From assembly GCF_028641065.1 (NCBI RefSeq), contig NC_073389.1, forward strand, positions 43,276,001 to 43,340,000: DNA of 64,000 nt. Direction: 5' to 3'. A program made the position numbers and the translations under genes. The notes under the pieces are model-generated. The model was not told where the DNA came from and did not search any database. It worked only from the letters and a program-made list of their open reading frames with translations. Shown piece by piece: positions 1,814-54,065 of the stretch. Each line of letters opens with the position of its first letter. Within the stretch, counting starts at the first letter, position 1. The DNA comes from Leucoraja erinacea (taxonomy: Eukaryota).

Positions 1814-3182
1814 CATGGCAAGAGCAAGGTTCTTGAATTATTTCAGCTTCATTGTCATACAAGGGGAAAATGTATCTTACATTGCTCCATGAAAATACAG
1901 TTTCACAAGCCTGAATGAGAAATAGTTCAAATAGACCACCATTAATCACTGGTAGGTTTCCTATATGTGGAGAGAAATGAAGAGAAATACAAGTAGGAAA
2001 ATCAAAAAGCTGCAGTTGCTATCCTTCGAAGCTAAATTGTTTTGCTCTCGCCTAGTTCGGCTAAAAGATTTCCACCTGAAGCTTTACTCAGTTTTCCCTT
2101 CCACAGATGCTGCCGAACCTGCTGGACATCTCCAGCATTTTCTGTTTTTTTATTATGAGAGAGGAAAATATTCAGTTTCAAATTTGAAATCCAACAAAAA
2201 AAGTAATGAAATTTGAATGGTAGATTATAATTTGGGGTCCGTTTTCCAGAAATGGTTACTTTAACTCGCGTAATTCTGAGCATTTGCTGCTTCTTATGTG
2301 TTGTCAGTGAGGAGACAAGTTGCTGTATATACAGATAAATAGATTCCCCTGCCCCACCCAGTGGAAACAAATGACAGAAGAATTTGTGTTATTAGCAAAC
2401 TGATTGAATATTAAAATGTTGCAGACATAAACGAAACAGACACTTAATTTACTCCTGATCATTTAACACAGCCATCAGTCATGTCTTACATGACCTCAAA
2501 TATGGCTTTGAAAATAAATGGAGAAGCCCATGCTCATTTGTACACCATTTGTTCCTATTGCTCTGCAGACCATATGTTCACATGTCACCAGACCTTTTGT
2601 TTTATATAAAGTATGCAACAAAGCAACATAAAAAGCAGCAAGGGAAAGTTAAACAAAGTAGGGACAGAATGTCAGGCCCAAGTACTTGTTGGCCTGCTTC
2701 ATTCTATTACTTTTGGCTGAAAATCTGCAGCGTTTGAATCAGAGATTTAGCGCCCACATCTGCAGAAATCCGTCAGATATTGCATAGCTAAATGAGGTCT
2801 GTAGGTACATGTGAATGATGAAAGTGAAATGGATGGTGTATCTATTCTGGCCCCAAGTAAACTAATTGCAAAAAACCCCAGTATTATTATCGATGTCAGT
2901 GATCTACAGAACAAAATAGTTGGTGGCCACTAGTTCCTATTTGGTCAGGACAGTCTTGACCTATATAATAGGTACAGTGCCATCTTATGCTGCAGGATAA
3001 CATTTATCCCACAGTTCTACAAGTCTCAATAAGAACATCCTTCCAGTAGTTACTGAGAGATGTGTTAGCACAGGGAGCAGAGTGCTGATACAATGATAGG
3101 CCAAAGGCACCATATTTTATAAATAACTGTTTGGAAGAGTTTGGGTGGGATAAAATGGATTCAGAGATTTAGTGGAGTGAGA

Positions 3183-3352
3183 GCTTCTTCTTCTTGTTGA
3201 GACCATACACAAGATTAGAAGTTGTTCAGCCAGAGTTGAACACACTTCTCGGCATCTGCATACAATGGCGTCTGTCTTATTGCTTCTTGTGCTTCTTGCG
3301 TGTGATGGTGGAAAGATTGGTGGAAACAGGGCAATGCTCTTTCCTTGACCCC
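3183..3352 (-). mobile_element. Ribozyme-headed short retroelement, family A (L3/P3 deleted copy)
   Basis: Reverse complement GGGGTCAAGGAAAGAGCATT-GCCCTGTTTCCACCAATCTTTCC...(AAG)n, collinear with the 24114 copy; TSD GGAGTGAGA at 3174-3182 / 3356-3364. Confidence 0.8.
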
Positions 3353-4149
3353 AGCGGAGTGAGATTGCACTTGATGAGATACTGACACATTGTGGGAAAG
3401 TGGACATGAGAGGATGGAAAGTAAACGGTCCAAGGAACGAGAGGAGAGTGGGTTAGGATTGGGTGGGATATTTGAGGTTGCAGGGAGAGAGGGTAGAGTG
3501 AAATCCCTGGCTGGGATTGCAATCAAGCAGAGGGAACCATTCTTGAGTGAATGAGGAACTAGCATTTTACAAAATGCAAAGGAGAGCCTGTGGAGGCATT
3601 CTTGCTATCTGCTCTGAGCCTGTTTGGATACCGTGCAGACTGTCCCCAGATTACATTAGTGTGCTGTTCCTGAGTACTGTCCATAAGAACATTTCTCTGT
3701 CGGTTGGAAATGTTCATTTTCTATACCTTAACCATTTTGTATTGCTCTTCATACACTAGCTACAATTCTTTCATTTCATTGAATTATTACCCTGATGTTA
3801 CCTATAAGTAAATTAATGGAATGTAAAATAACTGTGCCCAGACATTAATGTATACCATGAAACATTTTACTTTTCTTATTGCTAGGTCATGTTAGGTCCT
3901 TCATTGCTATTTTCATGTTAGGTCTTTCAAAACACAGCTAGCTCCTATACAAAAGAAAGCATTAAGATGATCACCCATCTGTATTTAGGAATATACTCCA
4001 AACCGAATACATTACCAGTCACATGCTGAATTGAAACAAGACGTGATTTCAGCAGGGAAGCAGGGGTTCAGAGTTGGCAGTGGGGGGGAGCAGAAACAGT
4101 AATAGTGTAGAGTCATCAGGTTCCATCAGACATCCTGCATCAATCCAAG

Positions 4150-8830: not shown

Positions 8831-9013
8831 CTTTAAGAAGGAACAGCAGATGCTGGAAAATCGAAGGTAAACAAAAATGCTGGAGAAACTCAGCGGGTGC
8901 AGCAGCATCTATGGAGCGAAGGAAATAGGCAACGTTTCGACCCGAAACGTTGCCTATTTCCTTCGCTCCATAGATGCTGCTGCACCCGCTGAGTTTCTCC
9001 AGCGTTTTTGTGT
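8831..9013. mobile_element. Penelope-type fold-back element, near-perfect hairpin
   Basis: 69-bp arms 8871-8939 / 8943-9011 with one mismatch; perfect 14-bp TSD AAGCTTGATGAAGT at 8817-8830 / 9014-9027. Confidence 0.85.
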
Positions 9014-17459: not shown

Positions 17460-17730
17460 TCTGCCTTGGGTGTTCTCTGTTGCCAGAGTGAGGCCACATG
17501 CAAACTGGAGGGATATTCTGCATTCTGTTTGTAGTTTGTTTGGTTGTTTGTTTGTTTGTCTTTTTGCACAAAGTTTGTGAGCATTGCCACTTTTCAGTTG
17601 ACTGCACATCTCGTATGTGTATTTGACGAATAAACTTGACTTGACTTAACTTGACTTGACTTGACTTGACTTGGGTAGCTTACAACCCAACATGAAACCC
17701 CTTAACAATGAATGTTAAGTTCTCCAATAT
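17460..17730 (+). mobile_element. Penelope-like ORF C-terminal (GIY-YIG end) relic, interrupted by a Rex1-type 3' tail (about 17525-17672)
   Basis: Translates SALGVLCCQSEATCKLE ... LGSLQPN..MNVKFSN, resembling the 'RKLEE..LIFRLGSLQP.GMN' end of Penelope ORFs. Confidence 0.55.
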
Positions 17731-23695: not shown

Positions 23696-24113
23696 ACTAC
23701 TGGTGCCTTAGTTTAGCTAGATACTGTATCTTTTAAGATGTTAAAAGGAGATTTGCAGGAATGGAAGCTTGCTCTGGCCTGGAGAACTCCCTTTAAGAAC
23801 TAGCAATGAAGACTTCAGCTGCAGTGGGGCTGAGAGAGCCATAGAATATAGAAAAATAGGTGCAGGAGTAGGCCATTCGGCCCTCTGAACCAGCACCGCC
23901 ATTCAATATGATCATGGCTGATCATCTAAAATCAATATCCCATTCCTGCTTTTTCCCCATATCCCTAGATTCCTTTAGCCCTGAGCCATAAATGAGTAAT
24001 GCGATTGAAGTTGATATAATCAGTCATTTGGTGGAAAGAATATGGATTTGGAATTAGATAGGAACCCGTTTGCAAATATTGTGATTAAGCCTGATCCAGT
24101 GTCCATTACTGGA

Positions 24114-24165
24114 GGGGTCAAGGAAAGAGCGTTCATGTCGTGGCCCTGTGTTCACCAATCTTTCC
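24114..24165 (+). ncRNA. Minimal HDV/CPEB3-like self-cleaving ribozyme fold
   Basis: P1 GGGGUC/GGCCCU (G1.U wobble), P2 GGAAAGA/UCUUUCC, P3 GCG/CGU, L3 UUCAUGU, GU after P1, vestigial P4, J4/2 C-C-A-A. Nested double-pseudoknot order is correct. Confidence 0.7.
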
Positions 24166-24287
24166 ACCACCATGCACAAGAAGCACAAGAGGCGCAAGAC
24201 AGACACCATTGTATGCAGATGCCGAGAAGTGTGTTCAGCTCTGGTTGAACAACTTGTAATCTTGTGTGTGGACTCGATAAGAAGAAG
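24114..24287 (+). mobile_element. Ribozyme-headed short non-autonomous retroelement, family A
   Basis: Starts at ribozyme G1, ends in (AAG)n, flanked by ACTGGAGG direct repeats (24108-24115 / 24288-24295; the left copy overlaps the first Gs). A second copy lies at 3183-3352 on the minus strand. Confidence 0.8.
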
Positions 24288-25869
24288 ACTGGAGGCTTCC
24301 CTGGTGTGTGAAGTGAGGGTGTTGCTCCCTAAGTTATTCTTCAAGATCGTTAAAGACTCTCCAATCCCATAACTGGCAGACAGCCAAAGACAAGTCAATG
24401 GCATCAATGGCTCTACGCTTAAATGATTTTAACGAGAGCCCAGGATGAATCTTAAATGCTATCTTGGGCGATGTGAAGGGGAATATACAGCATTTGTCTA
24501 ATCAACATTGGTCCCATTATTGGGCACAGAGAGTTTTCTAGATGATACGATTTGCATATGCACTGTCTAATTTGCATACATTTCCTTTTAAAATGTAATC
24601 TAAAAATTTGCAGATGCTAAGTGTCACCATTTTTGTGACCCAAAATATTGCAGAATCCTAAGAAGCAAAAGATGGGCCAGTTTATTAGCTGATTAGCTAT
24701 GCTGATGTAAATTATCAAATTCTCAGGGATGTTGAGGAACTGTAAGCTGTAAAACATAAAACTACTGTTAGCTATGAGAATGGAGGTTTTTAAAGTGGCG
24801 AGTAAACAATTAAAGGTCATTCTCGACAAGTTCGCAATAGAATTAGTGAGGTTTCAAGTGAAATTGACAGATATTCTGTTTAATGTGTGGGTGCACCCTC
24901 TAGTGATATGTAATAGGTCATATGCAATATACATATGAGCACATGTACCATATCTGTTTATCGACATATAATATATAAAACTTGTAAAGATACACATATT
25001 TATTGAAATGCCTAGCTGTAACAACTATAAAGTGTGCAGGTAGTGTAGGTTGTTCTATGTAGCTACTTATGAACAGAGCCATCAATAAACCACCCACTGA
25101 ACTCACATGGGCTGCACATGAAAGCAGCTGAGCCGCTGAAGTTAAGGCAATGCCAGGATGCTCTGATTCACTGTGTGTCCTGTCAATGAATGAGAATTAA
25201 ACTGTGGTACGCCTTTATGTTTTCATTTTCCACAGTCAAAAATAACAGAGGATGAAAGCTTCCCGCTTGTGTATTCAGAACTGTAATTTTTTTTCCAGCA
25301 GTATTGTACTGCTGATATAGTGTGAAATTAATCAAGGCTATCTCCAGGCTCCTTTTCAGATGGCTGCCTTCTCTGTAAAGGAAGCATGTGGTAAAGCAGA
25401 GAGAATGTGTTTGTGTCACCACGGTGATAACCTGATCAGCAAGATGCCAAAAAAAGGACACTCTGTAAACCACAGCCCTCTGTGTAGCAGTTCTTGCATA
25501 TTAAAGCTGGGCAGCACAGTGCATGGAAGTTTAAATGTCTGGGGTATAATAGAACTCTCATTGTAAGTGACCAGTTTCAGTCATTGTGCTCAGCAACATT
25601 GAACTGTACAGAAATATACCTACTATTGTAACTAAGTGATCTCAGGTATAACATAAGTGCTCTCTTAGGTCTTAGCTTGTTCCATGTCAGACATCTGCAA
25701 TTAAGTAATAGCAAGATTAATATTAAGGGAAATCAATTCAATGAATTAACAATGTCACAAAGCAATCTGATGCAGAATTGGTTAATATATATCTGTGTTA
25801 GCTGTGCACTTTGGCAGAAAGCCACACACACCTTGGAAATGGTAGTCGAATGAAACAAGGTTCCAAATA

Positions 25870-26505
25870 TAGATAAAGACACAAAGTTCTGGAGTAACTT
25901 AGAGGGTCGGGCAGGTTCTCTGGAGAACTTGGATAGATGACGTTTCAGGAGGGGACACTTCAAGTCAAGTCAAGTCAAGTCAAGTTTATTTGTCACATAC
26001 ACATACAAGATGTGCAGTGAAATGAAAGTGGCAATGCTCGCAGACTTTTGTGCAAAAGACAAACAACAAAACAACCAAACAAATTATAAACACAATCATA
26101 GCACACATATTCTTTTACATGATAAATAATAGAAGGAAAAACGTTCTGTAGAGTTAGTCCCTGGTGAGATAGGCGTTTACAGTCCGAATTGCCTCTGGGA
26201 AGAAACTCTTCAGGCTGATCGGGGGTAAGGAGGGGCAGGACAAAACTGGGCAAGTAATAATCCTTGTCCTTGCCAGGCTTTGTTCAGCCCCTCCAAGCCT
26301 GCCCCTCGTTGCTTATCGCTTGCCAGGCATTGTCCTGCACATCCACTCTTCCAGCTTTCATCTCCCCCACCCCAATCAGTCAGAAGAAGGGTACCGATCA
26401 AAACTGTCATGTATCCATGTTCTCCAGAGATGCTGCCTAGCCCGCTGAGTTACTCCAGCAACTTGTGTGTCTTTTTGTAAAACAGCACCTATGGTTCTTT
26501 ATTTC
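25870..26505. mobile_element. Long Penelope-type fold-back element with a nested Rex1-type 3' end (about 25961-26207, minus)
   Basis: Inverted family arms at both ends; the insert carries a (CAAGT)n tail and closely matches the 3' end of the Rex-type copy at 48215-48480. Confidence 0.7.
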
Positions 26506-33975: not shown

Positions 33976-34626
33976 TCACTTGGGAAACCTCGTCTGGAGA
34001 CTGGGAGGGTTGAGGGTCGAGGGGATACAGTGAAACCTGCAAGCGGCACAAGCGCAAGGAGAGCCGGGCCACTGCTGGAAACAAGCCTGATCGTCCGGAG
34101 TCAAGGGGCACTTCATGGTCGGAGACGAGTGCCTGGGAGTGCCCAGGGTCAAGAGAGACGGAGCGGCTCCCAGCAGCAGCGAGCCCCCGGCTGTCAACAC
34201 TGGCAGCTGGGCCAGCCGAGAGGCAGAGCCGCTCCGGCCGTACATCTCGCCGATCAGCCTCTTCATCTCTTCCAGGGAGCTGGTGAGCATCAGGATGTAG
34301 TTCCTGGCCAGCAAGAGAGTGGCGATTTTGGACAGTTTCCTCACCGACGGCCCGTGAGCGTAAGGCATAACTTCCCGCAGCGCGTCCATGGCCACGTTCA
34401 GGTCGTGCATTCTCTTGCGCTCTCTGCTGTTGATCTTCTTCCTCAGTAGGAACTGCTCGTCCTCCGATAGATCCTTCTTACTCCTGGACTTGGCCGACGG
34501 GGTGGGACTGGGCGACTCGTCGGGGGAATGTGACCGATCGGCGGGGTCGATCTTGTGGGAGATGTTGTACAAGGTGGGCGTGACCACGAGCAGTTCGTTC
34601 GGCGTCGACTTCAGCAACTCGCTCAT
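33976..34626 (-). CDS. olig1: Oligodendrocyte transcription factor 1-like bHLH protein (216 aa, single coding exon)
   Basis: b[57 protein letters not shown] is unmistakably Olig family. Basic residue before KINS, MDALREV, C-terminal CxCxxCRF...LQTRFPK (cf. human OLIG1 ...VCKF...VQAQFSK) and absence of the Olig2/3 N-terminal MDSDA..SSRxSSP favour Olig1. First in-frame ATG at 34626 has a good Kozak context (cagaccATG); the ORF track's 34761 start is a TTG. Confidence 0.85.
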
Positions 34627-42580: not shown

Positions 42581-42872
42581 CAATCAAAAGAGGAAAATCA
42601 TTAAAGGATATCTCCCTGGTGGCAATAGAGAGTTGATCTGAATGATTTGCTTGTTTCTGTCTATTAATGTGAAACAATGTGTTTAACCAAGAAGCACAAG
42701 GAAACACCTGCATTGTCTCTTCCAAGCTGTACAACTCTCTGAATGGGAAATTTAGTACAATTCCTCCATTGCTACTTGTTCCAAGTCCTGGTATTCCTCA
42801 CTCAACATGACCATGGAAGTACCTTCACTGGATGGGATGTTACAGTTCAGGAACCTGGCACATCACCATCTT

Positions 42873-43007
42873 CATGGGGTGGGAGATTGCAACCTTCACA
42901 CGCCCTGTTTTGACGATGCCATCAACCCGGCGTGAAAAATCAAATAAGATCAAATAGAACAAGTTGTCCTGCAACTTTAGGCTGTGCACGCCATACGCAA
43001 GAAGAAG
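42873..43007 (+). mobile_element. Ribozyme-headed short retroelement, family B (degenerate HDV-like head)
   Basis: GGGGUGG-GA-GAUUGCA-ACC-UUCAC...CGCCCU-GU-UUUG-A-C-GA-UGCCAUC head, (AAG)n tail, TSD ACCATCTT at 42865-42872 / 43008-43015. Confidence 0.7.
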
Positions 43008-43624
43008 ACCATCTTTATAACGACAATTGAGTACAGGCTATCAATGCTGTCCTTGACCAAAGAAGAATAAATAAAACAAAAATATAGTTTGTTTATTTAG
43101 TTATTTCAGAAGATGAACAGCTCATTAATGACTATAATGCCCCAGAAAGAAAGAGGATGGCAGTCATTTTATTACCCTTGCGTTTTCCCTTTAGGTTATT
43201 GCATATTTACTCACAGGTCTGAGATTACAAACGTCAGTCATTCCTGCACATATTGATCAAATCAGTTTCCTGAGATTTCATCCTTGAGTACTCTTCAGGT
43301 TTTCTCCCCATTTCTGCTCTGGATCCAAGAGTTTCCGAAGGTTGACAATGAAAACGTTTGGTTCTTCTTTTCTCTACCTTTACATCTTTCATGTTCCTTC
43401 TTTGGATACATCTGGCAAGTTCTGCCAGTTACAAGATTGATGCATGATGCATTCTTAAATGTGACTTACAATTCTGCAAAATATTCAACTTGCTGCATTT
43501 TCAAATTATTGTGGAATCTTTAAAACAAGCACAATTACAGTATATCTGCTTCCCTCTCCAAGAACACCCCTCAAGCCTTGGAGTGAAAGCAGAATAATTT
43601 TTTTGACATTTCAGCCACTTTTTA

Positions 43625-44790
43625 TTGAATTTGAATTGAATTGAATTTTCTTTATTGTCATTCAGACCTTTCAGTCTGAACGAAATTTCGTGCCTGCAGT
43701 CATACATACAATAATACAATAATAGACAACAGAACAGACAGTAAACCCAAATTAACATCCACCACAGTGAGTCCACCAAGCACCTCCTCACTGTGATGGA
43801 GGCAAATATCTTAGGGCTGCAGTCTCTTCCCTCCTCTTCTCCCTCTGCGCTGAGGCGATACCCCACCGGGCGATGGTAAATCAGTCCCAGGGCTCACCGA
43901 GCTCCGCGAACGGGCCGGTTCAAACACCGTGGCCCGGGGTGGTCGAAGCTGCCGCCCTCCAGTCCAGAGGACACAGCTGTTGACGACGTCGTCCACTGGC
44001 CCGCGGCCGAACCCCGGAACTCAGGTCGCCGCCGCCAGAACGCCGTCTTAGCCACCGGAGCGCCGTTCCAGCCACGAGCCGGGTCGCCCTCACGTGAGCG
44101 TCTCAGCCCCGTGCCAGGTCGCCCTCACGGGAGCGCCATTACCCTCGAGCTGGGCCGCCCCGACGGGAGCGCCGTTCCACCCTCGAGCTGGGCCGCCCCG
44201 ACTGGAGCGCCGCTCCACCCTCGGGCTGGGCCGCCCCGATGGGAGTGCCGCTCCACCCTCGAGCTGGGCCTCCCTCACGGGAGCGCCGCTCCACCCTCGA
44301 GCTGGGCCGCCCCAATGGGAGCGCCGTTCCACCCTCGGGCTGGGCCGCCCCGAAGGGAGCGCCGCACCACCCTCGGGCTGGGCCGCCCACACGGGAGCGT
44401 CTCAGCCCCTCGCCAGGCTGCCCTCACGGGAGCATCACAGCCCCTCACGGGAGAGCCATTCCAGCCCTGAGCTGGGCCGCCCTCACGGGAGCGAGCCCAG
44501 GGTGAGTCCTGACAGGCTGCCTCCGGAGCCTCAAGATCGCCAGCTCCACCATTAGGCCTCAGCGCAGACGGAGGCAGAGAAGGGGGATGCGACAAAAAAG
44601 TCGCATTCCCCCGAAGGGAGAGACAGCAAGCCCTGTTTCAACCCCCCCCCCCCCCACCCCCCCCCCCCCACACCTAAACACAACCCAAAAAAACAAAAAC
44701 TTAGTTAGACAAAACGAAAAAAAACAACACAAAAAAGTAAAAACAAACGGACTGCAGGCTAGCCGCAGCCGTTCACCAGCGCCGCCACTT
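43625..44790 (-). mobile_element. GC-rich non-autonomous retroelement with a Rex1-type 3' tail and internal minisatellite
   Basis: (ATTCA)n tail, AATAAA, GCCTCCATCACAGTGAGGAGG segment shared with the 4478 element; 5' end AAGTGGCGGCGC. Confidence 0.7.
44128..44400. repeat. 38-bp GC-rich minisatellite (about 7 units plus degenerate flanking units)
   Basis: Unit CGGGAGCGCCGYTCCACCCTCGRGCTGGGCCGCCCCGA repeated head-to-tail. Confidence 0.9.
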
Positions 44791-46420: not shown

Positions 46421-47797
46421 CAAAACATTGCAAAATGTCTTATTTAATCCCAAACATTGGTCAAAGAAAGGGATATTAATTGTTCAGAAAATCGGTTGCA
46501 TCAGTGTCTCATTATACTTCACTCATTTAATTCAAGATTGAAATCAATGCCAGATTTCTATCTCTCCCCTCCCTTCCCCCTCCCTACAACCAGTCTGAAG
46601 AAGGATCTCGACCCAAAATATCACCTATCCATGTTCTGCCTGATCCGCTGAGTTACTCCAACACTTTGGTCCCAAATGTAACTGATGGAGTTGAAACCCA
46701 GAGACACAAGCCCATCTGCAGAAAGTACAAGCAGTCCCTTGGGGTTCAGCTGTCTGTCAGTAGATGGTTCTTTGCCTTCCCTTTCTCTTCTTGACTTTGA
46801 GGACAGCGTGCATGTAGCTAAAAGTAGGCCATTGACTCACAGAAGGTATGATGTCATTTGAGCGGACCAACAACTTAAACTTCTCACAACTTGTGATGCC
46901 TGAGCTTGAGTCTGCTTGTGTCTTCAGCTTGAGTCTGAAGAAGGGTCTTGACTCGAAACATCACCTATTCCTTTCCTCCTGAGATGTTGCCTGACCCGCT
47001 GAGTTACCACATCATTTTGTGTCTATCTTTGGTGTAAACCCGCATCTGCAGTTGCTTCCTACACATTGTGATGTCTATATCTGTTTAAGTGAGATATATT
47101 CTCAGAATGTCTTTATAGAATTATTCAAGAGTCAAGATGAGAGTGTTTTATTGTCGTAAGTACAGTAAACAGAACAACGGAATTCTTATTTATTTTGATA
47201 AGCACTGGCTCTCAAAGGTTTAATGGTACTTTATTACCACATGTGCTGGGATACAGTTAAATTGTTATTTGCATTCAGTTAAGTACAAGTATTACTATAC
47301 CTAAGCACATCTTAGATACAGTACAAATGTATAGAAATAATACACTGAGACAGCAGACAAGCGTCGTCAGGTTTGGTACTATTTTCAAGTCCCAGTTGTT
47401 GTAAGTACAGAGTTCTTAACCTGGCCATGAAGGCCTGTTGTTATGGCAATGTTGCAGGGTTGGCCTGGCCAAGCATAGCCATAGGTGTCCTCCACCACTC
47501 CTTAAAGCTGGAGGTCGCATCTGGTCTGCGTGCTTGGCCTCTTGGAGCGGCACCCGATCCAGCCTCCAGTGGCTCATGCCACCGCTGAGGTGTACTGCAT
47601 TGCCTCCTGCAGCCGGTCTGCTTACCGGCCCTCTATTTCTCACGTCCACCACCACGATTGACATTTTAGACATCTTTTCCCACCTGTCTGGGCCTCGAGG
47701 CCGAGCAGGGAAGTGATCGATGGCATGTCACTTGGGGATGATCTGTTACACGGCACCGTGGTTGCCTCTCTGACCATTGGTCACTACATTATGTGCA

Positions 47798-48480
47798 CTG
47801 GGAGTCCACATCTCTGAGGATATGACATGGGCATCACACGCCTCAGCACTCGTGAGTAAGGCAAGGCAGCGCCTTTACCACCTCAGGCAATTGAGGAAAT
47901 TCAGAGTGTCTCCGAGGATCCTCCAGTGCTTCTACGCAGCGGCGGTGGAAAGCATCTTGTCCGGGAACATTACCATCTGTTTTGGGAATTGCTCTGCCAA
48001 GAACAAGAAGGCTCTGCACAGAGTAGTGCGTTCGGCCGAACGCACTATGGGAACTTCACTTACCCCCCTGCAGGAACTATACAACAGGAGGTGCAACTCC
48101 AGAGCAAACAAAATCATGGGAGACCCCTTCCACCCCTGCAACGGACTGTTTTGGCTGCTACGGTCAGGCAAACACCTCCGTTGCCATGCGGTGAGAACGG
48201 AGAGGTTGAGAAGGAGTTTCTTCCCAGAGGCAATTCGGACTGTAAACGCCTATCTCACCAGGGACTAACTCTACAGAACGTTTTTCCTTCCATTATTTAT
48301 TATGTAAAAGAATATGTGTGTTATGATTGTGTTTATAATTTGTTTGGTTGTTTTGTTGTTTGTCTTTTGCACAAAGGTCCGCGAGCATTGCCACTTTCAT
48401 TTCACTGCACATCTCGTGACAAATGTGACAAATAAACTTGACTTGACTTGACTTGACTTGACTTGACTTGACTTGACTTG
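47798..48480 (+). mobile_element. Rex1/Babar-clade LINE 3' fragment
   Basis: LGVHISEDMTW...KARQRLYHLRQLRKF...FY..AVESIL...DPFHP...RLRRSFFPEAIR; (CTTGA)n tail. Confidence 0.9.
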
Positions 48481-52174: not shown

Positions 52175-54065
52175 AGTTTAGTTTAGTTTATTGTCACATG
52201 TACTGAGGTACGGTCAAAAGCTTTCTTGTTGCGTGCTCTCCGGTTAGCGGAAAGACTGTACATGATTACAATCAAGCCGTCCACAGTGTACAGATACGCT
52301 GAGCACCGGCTCCCCTCAAGGCTGTGTGCTCAGCCCGCTGTTGTTCACATTGCTCACACATGACTGTGCTGCCAGATTCAGTGACAATAAGATCATAAAA
52401 TTTGCGGATAACACAACAGTGGTGGGACTCATCAGCGGAGATGGCGAATCAATGTACAGGGAGGAAGTAAAACAACTAGTGGACTGGTGCGGCAAAAATA
52501 ATCTAGATTTAAATGTCAACAAAACAAAGGAGATGGTTGTGGACTTCAGGAGGGCGCAGCCAAAGCATACACCCCTCAACATCAGTGGCACCACAGTGGA
52601 GAGAGTGGAGAGCATAAAGTTCCTCGGTGTGCAAATTACAGACAGCCTCACCTGGTCCAGGAACACCACTGGGACCGTCAAACGGGCCCATCAGCGACTG
52701 CACTTCCTGAGGAAACTAAAACAGACCTCACTCCCCACCAACATCCTCAGGACTTTCTACAGGGGTACGGTGGAGTCTGTACTCACGTACTGCATAAATA
52801 CGTGGTACTACACCTACAACTGCTCGGACAGGAAGGCTCTGCAGAGGGTAGTGAGTGGAGCAGAGAGGATCATTGGCGTCTCCCTACCCTCGGTACAAGA
52901 ACTGTTCCAGAGCGCTGTCTGAAAAAAGCTCAGAGAACTGCTAAGGACAAACTGCACCCCCTCCACATACACCTGGATCTCCTGCCATCAGGCAAGAGAT
53001 ATCGCAGCATCAAAGCCCGGACTACAAGACTGCTAAACAGCTTCCTGCCACAGGCTGTGAGGCTGCTAAACAGTCACTCTGTACTCACAGTCACTTGATT
53101 CTGCGGCTGGCACGGACATTTTAATAACTGGCACTGGCCACTTCAAAAATCAGCTGCCCCAGACATTTTTATGATTGGTTTTACTGTATTTTAACGTTGT
53201 TGTTTTACCTGCTTTTAACTATTTATACTGTTCCATCAGGGACTGGATTGTTTCTAATGTTATTGTGTGTGAAATGTTTTACATTTCATGTGCGATGCTC
53301 CGGTATTCCCTGGGAAACGTCTTTTCATTTTGCACTGTACAACTGTTGCTTGCAAGATGACAATAAAGGTTGATTGATTGATTGATAAAGGTAATAATGT
53401 TTAGTGCAAGATAAAGCCCAATAAAGTTTGACTAAAGATAATGTGAAGATCTCTAATGAGGTAGATGATAAGTCAGGACCCCTCTCTGGTTGGTGATAGG
53501 ATAGTTTAGTTGCCTGATAAGAGCTGCGAAGAAACTATCTCTGAATCTGGAGGTGTGCGTTTTCAAACTTCTGAACTTTTGCCTGATGGGAGAGGGGAGA
53601 AGGAGGAGTGTCTGAGGTGAGACCCATCCTTGATTATGCTGGTGGCCCTGCTGAAGCAGCGTGAAGTAAAGATGGAGTCAATGGAAGGGAGATTGGTTTG
53701 TTTGATGGGCTGGACTGCGACTATAATTCTCTGCAATTTCTTGCGGTCTTGGATGGAGCTATTAGCAAACCATGCTGTGACGCATCCCGACAAAATGCTT
53801 TCCGTAGAAGTTGGTGAGAGTTGGTGGGGACATGTTGAACTTCCTTAGCCTTCCTTAGAAGTATTGGTGTGCTTTCTTGGCTATTGCTTTGACATGGCTG
53901 GTCCAGTTGCTGCTGATAGTTACTCTTGGGAACTTGAAGCTTTCAACTGTCTCTTCTTCGGCGCCGTCAATGTATACTGGGGTATGCGTATTGGTTTGTT
54001 TCCTAAGTCAATCACAATCTCCTTTGTCCTGCTGACATTGGGGGAAAGGCTGTTGTCTTGGCAGC
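52175..54065 (-). mobile_element. Host Rex1-type LINE fragment split by the 52298-53384 insertion
   Basis: (TTTAG)n tail at 52175; collinear continuation after 53385 with SGCVTAWFANSSIQDRKKLQR...LPSIDSIFTSRC. Confidence 0.8.
52298..53384 (+). mobile_element. Rex1/Babar-clade LINE (RT C-terminal half), nested in an opposite-strand Rex-type element
   Basis: PQGCVLSPLLFTLLTHDC...KFADNTTVVGLI (FADD changed to FADN); frameshift near 52915; (TTGA)n tail. Confidence 0.9.

What the first reader, a model, noticed from the sequence alone, without database searches (positions are those of the whole stretch)
24108..24295. SINE-sized retroelement whose 5' end is a minimal HDV/CPEB3-like ribozyme
Seen: a 174-nt TSD-flanked, (AAG)n-tailed element with no tRNA A/B boxes. 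Its first 52 nt fold as an HDV-type double pseudoknot: P1 GGGGUC(24114-19)/GGCCCU(24142-47) with G1.U, P2 GGAAAGA(24122-28)/UCUUUCC(24159-65), P3 GCG/CGU, L3 UUCAUGU, then G-U-N4-A-C-C-A-A with the putative catalytic C at 24155. Reverting two CpG decays gives AGCGUUCACGUCGCGGCCCUGU, almost the core of the mammalian CPEB3 ribozyme as I recall it (AGCGUUCACGUCGC(A/G)GCCCCUGU). Established: HDV-like ribozymes head R2, RTE and L1Tc/Ingi retrotransposons, and R2 gives rise to short internally deleted non-autonomous elements. Inference: this is a promoter-less 'ribozyme-SINE' cut out of host read-through transcripts and mobilised by an RTE or Ingi/Vingi-type LINE. I do not know of a description in cartilaginous fish, and it may bear on the origin of the CPEB3 ribozyme. 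Caveat: P1 is 6 bp rather than the usual 7.
Basis: partly seen in the sequence, partly recalled or inferred. Interest (0 to 1): 0.9.

Follow-up and report, generated by a model that had tools for sequence, protein, structure and literature searches.

The report
Ribozyme-headed mini retroposon, CPEB3-type core
A very abundant 174-base jumping element in this cartilaginous-fish genome begins at the predicted cut site of a stripped-down self-cleaving RNA fold whose core closely matches the CPEB3 ribozyme known only from mammals, but cutting has not been shown.

Summary
Window 24114-24287 is a 174-nt element with (AAG)3 tail and ACTGGA target-site duplication. A second copy sits at 3184-3352 (minus), 84% identical and starting at the same G.

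Contigs of four coded organisms put the family at roughly 10^4-fold the flank depth. Its 5' edge falls at 24114 in 188-253 records per run.

All 17 pairs of the proposed P1/P2/P3/P1.1 double pseudoknot are standard pairs in this copy. That bare topology is expected about 1.2 times per 128 kb in shuffles. Rfam's CPEB3_ribozyme model matches 24114-24147 at 22.3 bits, below its gathering score of 35.

No tRNA, A/B box or other RNA family explains the head.

Not shown here: cleavage, covariation, the LINE partner, or descent of the mammalian ribozyme.

HDV-like ribozymes heading LINEs and their short derivatives are already known. This is a new variant: vertebrate, P4-less, CPEB3-type core.

The scan had already noted this family elsewhere in the same genome (s1-876289 and others).

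The parts
24108..24113 (+). left target-site duplication ACTGGA; the repeat extends to 24115 because the element itself starts GG
   Evidence: (D8: 24108-24115 = 24288-24295, 100%)
24114..24287 (+). copy A of the 174-nt retroposon (family B of earlier scan notes)
24114..24165 (+). 52-nt head: candidate P4-less HDV-like ribozyme, with predicted cleavage 5' of G24114
24114..24119 (+). P1 5' strand GGGGTC; pairs with 24142-24147 (6 bp, G1.U at the base)
24122..24128 (+). P2 5' strand GGAAAGA; pairs with 24159-24165 (7 Watson-Crick pairs)
   Evidence: (I14)
24129..24141 (+). P3 (24129-31 with 24139-41) enclosing L3 (24132-38). This copy has T at 24136 and 24141 where most of the family has C.
24142..24147 (+). 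P1 3' strand GGCCCT
24148..24154 (+). GT (J1/4; G24148 could pair with C24134 as P1.1), then 5 nt standing in place of P4. The family majority differs at 24150 and 24152.
   Evidence: PMC3774820 passage
24155..24158 (+). CCAA, in the position of the 4-nt J4/2 of the CPEB3 ribozyme. C24155 is the candidate catalytic cytosine.
   Evidence: PMC4836649 passages; assignment is by analogy (inference)
24159..24165 (+). P2 3' strand TCTTTCC
   Evidence: (I14)
24174..24199 (+). 2.9 copies of a 9-nt unit (GCACAAGAA). Contig depth dips here and contigs differ by indels.
24227..24255 (+). 3' stem-loop: 8-bp inner stem 24232-39 with 24244-51, loop TCTG. Candidate recognition site for the partner LINE's reverse transcriptase (inference).
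   Evidence: (z -2.78; 3 of 200 shuffles fold as well)
24279..24287 (+). (AAG)3 tail
24288..24293 (+). right target-site duplication ACTGGA
   Evidence: D8
3184..3352 (-). copy B of the same family, 84% identical. It starts at the same GGGG, lacks 9 nt of L3/P3', and has an (AAG)4 tail. TSD is 12 bp with one mismatch (3353-3364 and 3171-3182).
42876..43007 (+). 132-nt element of another (AAG)n-tailed family. It starts GGGGTG. TSD is 11 bp with one mismatch (42865-42875 and 43008-43018). An HDV-like fold could not be established from this one copy.

Best explanation
This is one copy of a non-autonomous non-LTR retroposon family of about 174 nt, present on the order of 10^4 times in several related cartilaginous fishes. 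Its first 52 nt are a P4-less HDV-like self-cleaving ribozyme with a CPEB3-type core.

Proposed mechanism:
1. A master copy is transcribed as part of a longer RNA.
2. The head folds into the P1/P2/P3/P1.1 double pseudoknot and cuts just 5' of G1 (24114). The RNA then begins at the element's first base, whatever lies upstream.
3. The 3' stem-loop and (AAG)n tail recruit the reverse transcriptase of an unidentified LINE.
4. That enzyme copies the RNA into a staggered nick, leaving 6-12-bp target-site duplications.

Shown: the element, its abundance, its sharp ends, the pairing scheme and the likeness to the CPEB3 model.

Inferred: cleavage, transcription from outside the element, the role of the 3' hairpin and the partner.

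This particular copy is an old insertion. It has two CpG decays in P3/L3 and is probably no longer the best catalyst.
For: Retroposon:
- TSD and tail.
- A second copy with its own TSD starts at the same G.
- All 3 of the 3 (AAG)>=3 runs in the window end TSD-flanked short elements that begin GGGG.

Abundance and edges:
- Summed word depth is 24-46 in the flanks against 1.2e5-1.6e6 inside 24110-24298 in X1-X3. For X10 it is about 8 against 3.5e4-1.9e5.
- Loose ends 'before 24114' occur in 216, 188, 253 and 252 records with no consensus (agreement 0.37).
- Loose ends 'behind 24288' occur in 119, 95 and 115 records.
- 3 of the 15 listed joints land on 24114.

Fold:
- 17 of 17 named pairs are standard in copy A.
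- The topology is expected about 1e-5 per position.

Likeness to CPEB3:
- RF00622 matches at 22.3 bits, window 24114-24147 to model positions 13-46. It is the only ribozyme family among the 25 matches of the whole-window E-value scan.
- 25 of 34 aligned letters equal the Rfam consensus line in this copy.
- With the family-majority C at 24136 and 24141 this becomes 27 of 34, with an unbroken run of 19 (24128-24146).
- GU follows P1', and a 4-nt C-N-A-A lies before P2', as described for the CPEB3 ribozyme (PMC4836649).

No other head type: no tRNA, 5S or 7SL match at E<=10, no ARAGORN hit, and A/B boxes no better than random pieces of the window.

Precedent:
- P1 of 6-7 bp, P4 dispensable, and 5 nt in its place in abalone (PMC3774820).
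- Minimal HDV-like ribozymes lack P4 (theta-ribozyme preprint).
- R2 SIDEs consist of a 5' ribozyme plus a 3' end (PMC3414825 abstract).
- L1Tc/NARTc/SIDER (PMC4035085 abstract).
Against: - No cleavage data, and no RNA reads. All 24 runs offered were Logan contigs, so RNA 5' ends could not be seen.
- A sharp 5' end fits any fixed transcription start just as well.
- The Rfam score is below gathering (22.3 against 35), and E=0.2 for the whole window. The match is local and leaves out model positions 47-78.
- P1 has two wobble pairs in six. J4/2 reads CCAA, not the C57-G58 start of the CPEB3 linker.
- Nested MFE folding of the head is not unusual: z = -1.2 for 34 nt and +0.34 for 52 nt. That method cannot see pseudoknots.
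- There is no covariation. 0 of 17 pairs vary between the two copies. Copy B has lost L3/P3', and dead copies decay neutrally anyway.
- The other family's head at 42876 matches my model at only 9.5 bits, E=1.7. I could not fold it as an HDV-like ribozyme.
- No LINE with this head or tail was found.
Confidence: 0.65

Rival explanations
1. The head is a relic. It descends from the HDV-like ribozyme of a parent LINE, but in this short family it no longer cleaves. It serves another role, such as protein binding or RNA stability, or none. The 5' end is set by an internal or upstream promoter.
For: P4 is absent, P1 is only 6 bp with two wobbles, and CCAA differs from the CPEB3 linker. The Rfam score is below gathering. 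The nested fold is not unusually stable. In R2 the ribozyme region also binds the element's protein and is thought to help translation (PMC6765202 passages).
Against: In the 40 rows that were shown (11 more were not), no majority difference from copy A touches P1, P2, G1.U or the CCAA, and both changes in P3/L3 go towards the CPEB3 consensus. P4-less and 6-bp-P1 ribozymes are reported active (PMC3774820). No promoter motif was found.
Confidence: 0.17
2. It is an ordinary SINE with a so-far unrecognised promoter-bearing head. The HDV-like pairing and the CPEB3 likeness are coincidence, picked out by a reader who was looking for them.
For: Every SINE has a sharp 5' end. The bare topology turns up 4 times in this window, 3 of them elsewhere. 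The CPEB3 hit has E=0.2 at window scale.
Against: The fold and the model hit both start at the family's first base, which has about 1e-5 prior per position. P2 (7 of 7 pairs) is not scored as pairs in the Rfam hit shown, so it is separate evidence. The family-majority letters raise the likeness rather than lower it. There is no tRNA, 5S or 7SL match and no A/B boxes.
Confidence: 0.08
3. It is not a mobile element of its own. It is a processed fragment or a segmental repeat of some host RNA gene.
For: None beyond its small size.
Against: Different TSDs at each of the three copies, simple-repeat tails, random flanks in hundreds of contigs per run, and about 10^4-fold depth in four organisms.
Confidence: 0.02

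Closest known systems
R2 SIDEs (short internally deleted elements) of Drosophila (PMC3414825; abstract seen)
   Same: A short non-autonomous element built from a 5' HDV-like ribozyme joined to a LINE-type 3' end, and propagated by the LINE's target-primed reverse transcription.
   Different: SIDEs are rare, sit in rDNA at the R2 or R1 site, and have an identified parent. This family is dispersed, has about 10^4 copies, variable targets and an (AAG)n tail. Its parent is unknown, and its ribozyme lacks P4.
L1Tc/NARTc/SIDER Pr77 HDV-like ribozyme of trypanosomatids (PMC4035085 and PMC3185411; abstracts seen)
   Same: A dispersed LINE and its truncated non-autonomous derivatives share an HDV-like ribozyme in their first ~77 nt. 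It frees the RNA from co-transcripts.
   Different: Those are protists, with polycistronic transcription, and Pr77 is also a promoter. No sequence likeness was tested here. Cleavage was shown there and not here.
Mammalian CPEB3 ribozyme (Rfam RF00622; PMC4836649 and PMC8233481, passages seen)
   Same: P3, L3, P3' and most of P1' match the Rfam consensus letter for letter once the family-majority letters are used. G1.U, GU after P1', a 4-nt C-N-A-A linker and P2 abutting P3 are also shared.
   Different: CPEB3 is a single-copy intronic element of mammals with a 7-bp P1 and a P4 hairpin. This one has a 6-bp P1, 5 nt instead of P4 and different P2 letters. It scores 22.3 bits against a gathering score of 35 and heads a multi-copy retroposon.
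Minimal (P4-less) HDV-like ribozymes: drz-Mtgn and theta ribozymes, and silkmoth R2 and abalone examples (preprint 10.1101/2023.06.13.544163; PMC3774820)
   Same: A double pseudoknot without P4. The abalone example is described as having 5 nt in its place, as here.
   Different: Those come from metagenomes or phages beside tRNAs, or from rDNA-specific R2. None is described as heading a vertebrate short retroposon in the passages I saw.

Membership tests
HDV-like ribozymes (structural class) | Nested double pseudoknot: P1 and P2 cross, and P3 lies inside P1 directly 5' of P1' | tested here: met
   16 of 16 pairs of P1, P2 and P3 are standard in copy A, in the right order and adjacency
HDV-like ribozymes (structural class) | G1.U wobble at the cleavage-site end of P1 | tested here: met
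   G24114 with T24147; feature as described in PMC4836649
HDV-like ribozymes (structural class) | Cytosine in J4/2 just before the 3' strand of P2 | tested here: met
   CCAA at 24155-24158 abuts P2'. Only its presence is shown. That it is catalytic is inference.
HDV-like ribozymes (structural class) | L3 U and G able to form the reverse wobble, and a P1.1 pair between L3 and J1/4 | tested here: met
   T24132 and G24137; C24134 with G24148. Mapping is by analogy to U20.G25 and P1.1 of CPEB3.
HDV-like ribozymes (structural class) | Site-specific self-cleavage | not testable with these tools
   No RNA reads were available: all 24 runs were contigs
HDV-like ribozymes (structural class) | Helices supported by compensatory change | tested here: inconclusive
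   0 of 17 pairs vary in 2 copies. One C-G to G-C swap at P1 pair 6 appears in the 42876 element, but that alignment has E=1.7.
Rfam RF00622 CPEB3_ribozyme | Score at or above the curated gathering score (35 bits) | tested here: not met
   22.3 bits, local match to model positions 13-46 of 78. A copy with the family-majority letters could not be scored.
Rfam RF00622 CPEB3_ribozyme | P4 hairpin and 7-bp P1 | tested here: not met
   5 nt stand in place of P4, and P1 is 6 bp
Rfam RF00622 CPEB3_ribozyme | Single intronic copy in the CPEB3 gene of mammals | tested here: not met
   Dispersed family at about 10^4-fold depth. No CPEB3 gene was seen among the ORFs scanned.
Non-autonomous non-LTR retroposon (SINE-like or SIDE-like) | Target-site duplications, simple-repeat 3' tail, and many dispersed copies with defined ends | tested here: met
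Non-autonomous non-LTR retroposon (SINE-like or SIDE-like) | 3' end shared with an autonomous LINE | not testable with these tools
   No partner is in the window. LINE fragments here carry (ACTTG)n tails. The genome could not be searched: one search was closed, and searches gave only chance hits.
SINE in the strict sense (pol III, tRNA/5S/7SL head) | Head derived from a pol III gene, with internal A and B boxes | tested here: not met
   The best A box has 2 mismatches and the best B box 3, as in 29% and 60% of 2000 random 174-nt pieces of the window. The box motifs were recalled from memory.

The most novel reading that the evidence does not exclude
The skate family is a living member of the lineage that gave rise to the mammalian CPEB3 ribozyme. 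On this reading a retroposon headed by this CPEB3-type core landed in the CPEB3 intron of a mammalian ancestor, and its head was kept. [quoted passage not shown] They would also show that P4-less HDV-like ribozymes are a working part of vertebrate mobile elements.
Probability: 0.2. Interest if true: 0.85.

Novelty: new variant of a known kind. Interest (0 to 1): 0.68.

Why it matters
**What is already known.** HDV-like ribozymes are known to head R2, R4, Dong, baggins, RTE and L1Tc elements and some short derivatives. The principle is therefore not new.

**What would be new.**
- A vertebrate genome carrying tens of thousands of copies of a SINE-sized element that seems to need no promoter of its own, because a 52-nt ribozyme trims it out of any transcript.
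- A natural P4-less HDV-like ribozyme with a clear biological setting. The theta-ribozyme preprint says the origin and role of minimal variants are undetermined.
- A core matching the CPEB3 ribozyme, for which the lack of non-mammalian relatives is stated to block deeper reconstruction of its ancestry.

**Other consequences.** It would put thousands of potential self-cleavage sites into host introns and UTRs. The question is directly testable by a one-day in vitro transcription assay.

**Search for prior descriptions.** My literature searches found no description in cartilaginous fish. Repbase and Dfam, subscription journals, Webb 2009, Ruminski 2011 and all supplements were out of reach.

Tried and rejected
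**Getting more copies**
- A protein search with the open sense frame of the element gave no candidates.
- A metagenome scan with the core motif gave 4 contigs of 58-65% G+C whose flanks show no sign of the element, so they are chance matches.
- An IMG/VR scan with a 19-mer from the element's body gave 3 contigs that share only 22 nt.
- As a result, no family alignment, no subfamily consensus and no R-scape-type test were possible.

**RNA evidence**
- All 24 runs offered were Logan contigs, which cannot show RNA starts. I used the single read-laying run on four DNA-type runs instead.

**Ideas rejected**
- The ATG at 24172 as the start of a leftover LINE ORF. Most of the family has C at 24173 (86-93%), so the ATG is a decay product.
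- Rex3 as the partner. Its tail is GCG(GAA)2(GATG)n, so my recollection of a plain GAA tail was wrong.
- The LINE fragments at 47.8 and 52.3 kb as partners. The run that follows the first one is (ACTTG)9 at 48436-48480, and no (AAG)n run lies near either.
- MFE stability as support for the head. The z-scores are not unusual.
- Per-site variant frequencies as a sign of selection on the head. Copies decay neutrally and 11 rows were not shown, so I draw nothing from them.

**Family at 42876**
- Helix listing and my model did not give a convincing HDV-like fold from this single decayed copy. I leave the earlier scan claim (s1-876317) untested except for the one P1 swap.

**Orthologous locus**
- Contigs from the four runs run 25-27 nt into the element from unique flank (table 8, records 1, 8, 16, 17, 24, 32).
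- That is under the tool's 31-letter rule for bridging, so a shared insertion in organisms A-D is suggested, not shown.

**Organism name**
- It is coded in my calls.
Full report
**What is there**

Window 24114-24287 (+) is a 174-nt element. It begins GGGGTC and ends in (AAG)3. It is flanked by ACTGGA, and the repeat reads ACTGGAGG because the element itself starts GG (family D8).

A BLAST of the stretch against the window finds one more copy at 3184-3352 on the minus strand, 84% identical. The alignment begins at the same G. That copy has its own 12-bp duplication with one CpG-type mismatch (3353-3364 and 3171-3182). It has an (AAG)4 tail and a 9-nt deletion that removes most of L3 and P3'.

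The window holds only three runs of (AAG)>=3. All three end a short TSD-flanked element that begins GGGG. The third is a 132-nt element of another family at 42876-43007, with an 11-bp duplication carrying one mismatch.

**Family level**

The one read-laying run laid Logan contigs of four runs, coded organisms A-D, on 23900-24500 at 80% likeness.

- Depth: summed word depth is 24-46 in the unique flanks of X1-X3 and about 8 in X10. It jumps to 1.2e5-1.6e6 (X10: 3.5e4-1.9e5) between 24110 and 24298. The tool warns that this is not a copy number, so I read it only as 'order 10^4'.
- Edges: loose ends lie 'before 24114' in 216, 188, 253 and 252 records, with no consensus among the loose letters (agreement 0.37).
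- 3 of the 15 listed joints land on 24114, and 12 of the 32 listed pieces begin at 24114.

The same call gives the family's majority letters where this copy differs.

| Position | Change | Share of depth |
|---|---|---|
| 24136 | T>C | 89-94% |
| 24141 | T>C | 89-95% |
| 24150 | G>T | 97-99% |
| 24152 | T>C | 78-87% |
| 24173 | T>C | 86-93% |
| 24191 | G>A | majority |
| 24245 | T>C | majority |
| 24256 | G>C | majority |

The change at 24173 removes the ATG that might otherwise suggest an ORF start.

Contigs from unique flank run 25-27 nt into the element in all four runs. That suggests the insertion is shared, but it falls short of the tool's 31-letter bridging rule.

**The fold**

On the named pseudoknot (P1 6 bp, P2 7 bp, P3 3 bp, one P1.1 pair), 29 of 29 cells with letters form standard pairs, against 50-64% when the partners are slid by 1-3 columns.

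A descriptor of my own asked only for the topology: G1.U, a 6-bp P1, P2 of at least 6 bp abutting a 3-bp P3, L3 of 6-8 nt, and P3' abutting P1'. It finds 4 sites in both strands of the window, against a mean of 1.23 (range 0-5) in 30 dinucleotide shuffles. The topology is therefore not rare per 128 kb. It is rare at one given nucleotide, about 1e-5, and here it starts at the first base of a repeat family.

Nested MFE folding gives no support, with z = -1.2 and +0.34. That method cannot represent the pseudoknot.

**Likeness to the CPEB3 ribozyme**

- No Rfam family reaches its gathering score anywhere in the window.
- In a 301-nt E-value scan, RF00622 CPEB3_ribozyme matches 24114-24147 to model positions 13-46 at 22.3 bits, E=9.5e-4.
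- In the whole-window scan the same hit has E=0.2. It is the only ribozyme family among the 25 matches.
- By my count on the printed alignment, 25 of 34 letters equal the consensus line. With the family-majority C at 24136 and 24141 this becomes 27 of 34, with an unbroken run of 19 (24128-24146) covering the last P2 letter, P3, L3, P3' and five letters of P1'.
- Relative to that consensus, P1 has lost one G-C pair on both strands. That is what a kept helix would look like.
- P2 is not scored as pairs in this hit, so its 7 of 7 pairing is separate evidence.
- After P1' come GU and later C-C-A-A directly before P2'. The CPEB3 ribozyme is described with a G-C plus U-U P1.1, a 4-nt J4/2 holding the catalytic C57, a G1.U36 wobble and a U20.G25 wobble in L3 (PMC4836649, passages). 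The matching letters are all present here.
- In place of P4 there are 5 nt.

**Are the oddities disqualifying?**

Passages of Eickbush et al. 2013 (PMC3774820) say the following.

- The P1 of R2 ribozymes is 'typically 6 or 7 bp'.
- An abalone HDV-like ribozyme has 'only 5 nucleotides instead of a P4 stem'.

The theta-ribozyme preprint states that minimal HDV-like ribozymes lack P4 and that their origin and function are undetermined.

**Other kinds of head**

- The E-value scan shows no tRNA, 5S, 7SL or snRNA match.
- ARAGORN finds nothing.
- The best A-box and B-box matches (motifs recalled from memory) have 2 and 3 mismatches. That is no better than 29% and 60% of 2000 random 174-nt pieces of the window.

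**3' end**

24227-24255 forms a stem-loop with an 8-bp inner stem (z = -2.78; 3 of 200 shuffles fold as well). The family-majority C at 24245 turns a G.U into G-C.

I take this stem-loop, with the (AAG)n tail, as the likely handle for a LINE reverse transcriptase of the stringent type. This is inference.

No partner is in the window. The two reverse-transcriptase fragments (RVT_1 and ALKBH8_N) belong to elements with (ACTTG)n tails. RTE elements regularly end in simple repeats (PMC2887409 abstract), and R4, Dong, baggins and L1Tc cleave at the element's 5' end (PMC3774820). The clade stays open.

**What it most likely is**

It is a non-autonomous retroposon that trims its own 5' end with a P4-less HDV-like ribozyme. 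In design it resembles the R2 SIDEs (5' ribozyme plus 3' end; PMC3414825 abstract) and NARTc/SIDER (PMC4035085 abstract).

[quoted passage not shown] The kind is therefore known. The variant is new to my searches: cartilaginous fish, about 10^4 copies, no P4, CPEB3-type core.

I put 0.65 on a working ribozyme in the master copies, 0.17 on an inactive relic and 0.08 on coincidence.

**The CPEB3 question**

Bendixsen et al. [quoted passage not shown] A 19-letter identity in the core is therefore worth attention.

The element also fails RF00622's own threshold. I give descent 0.2.

**Earlier notes of this scan**

describe the same 173-nt family (s1-876289), the ~135-nt family (s1-876316, s1-877453, s1-876300), a 190-nt family with a complete CPEB3-like ribozyme (s1-877965), and a comparison of families (s1-876317). 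Some of them claim RNA reads starting at G1 in the other family.

I treated these as leads. I re-derived the abundance, the sharp end and the fold for this family myself. I could not test the RNA claim, the full-LINE claim or the stem covariation, apart from one C-G to G-C swap at P1 pair 6 in an alignment with E=1.7.

**Limits**

- No cleavage or RNA-end data.
- Only two alignable copies.
- The genome outside the window could not be read (closed; unproductive).
- Repbase and Dfam, Webb 2009, Ruminski 2011 and all supplements were not seen.
- The organism name is not from my calls.

Noticed in passing
window 23900-23983: Just upstream of the element lies part of another repeat with even higher contig depth (about 4e5-7e6 against 24-46 in unique flank). 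Loose ends 'behind 23981/23982' share a consensus (agreement 0.64-0.72), so this copy is cut short relative to its family.
   Followed up: no
window 42876-43007: A 132-nt (AAG)3-tailed element of a different family starts GGGGTG and has an 11-bp TSD. Its P1-like strands carry a G-C where the 174-nt family has C-G, but I could not complete an HDV-like fold from this single copy.
   Followed up: partly
window 8883-8999: A hairpin of about 110 nt matches several unrelated miRNA-precursor and hairpin models on both strands, all below gathering (best 45.7 bits against 73). It looks like a palindromic repeat rather than a known RNA gene.
   Followed up: no
window 33979-34626 (-): An intron-less ORF carries a helix-loop-helix DNA-binding domain (Pfam HLH, E=3.5e-15). 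It is the only clear host gene I saw.
   Followed up: no
window 47777-48480 and 52326-52922 (+); also 17634-17673 and 25960-25985: LINE reverse-transcriptase fragments (RVT_1 and ALKBH8_N). One is followed by (ACTTG)9. Two more (ACTTG)n or complement runs lie elsewhere. This is a second LINE/SINE system, unrelated to the (AAG)n elements.
   Followed up: no
window 44052-44399: A GC-rich 38-bp tandem repeat of 9.3 copies, followed by a C28 run at 44642-44669.
   Followed up: no
window 24174-24199: Inside the element, a 9-nt unit is repeated 2.9 times. Contig depth dips there, and loose ends at 24195 carry a shared consensus, so copies seem to differ in the number of units.
   Followed up: no
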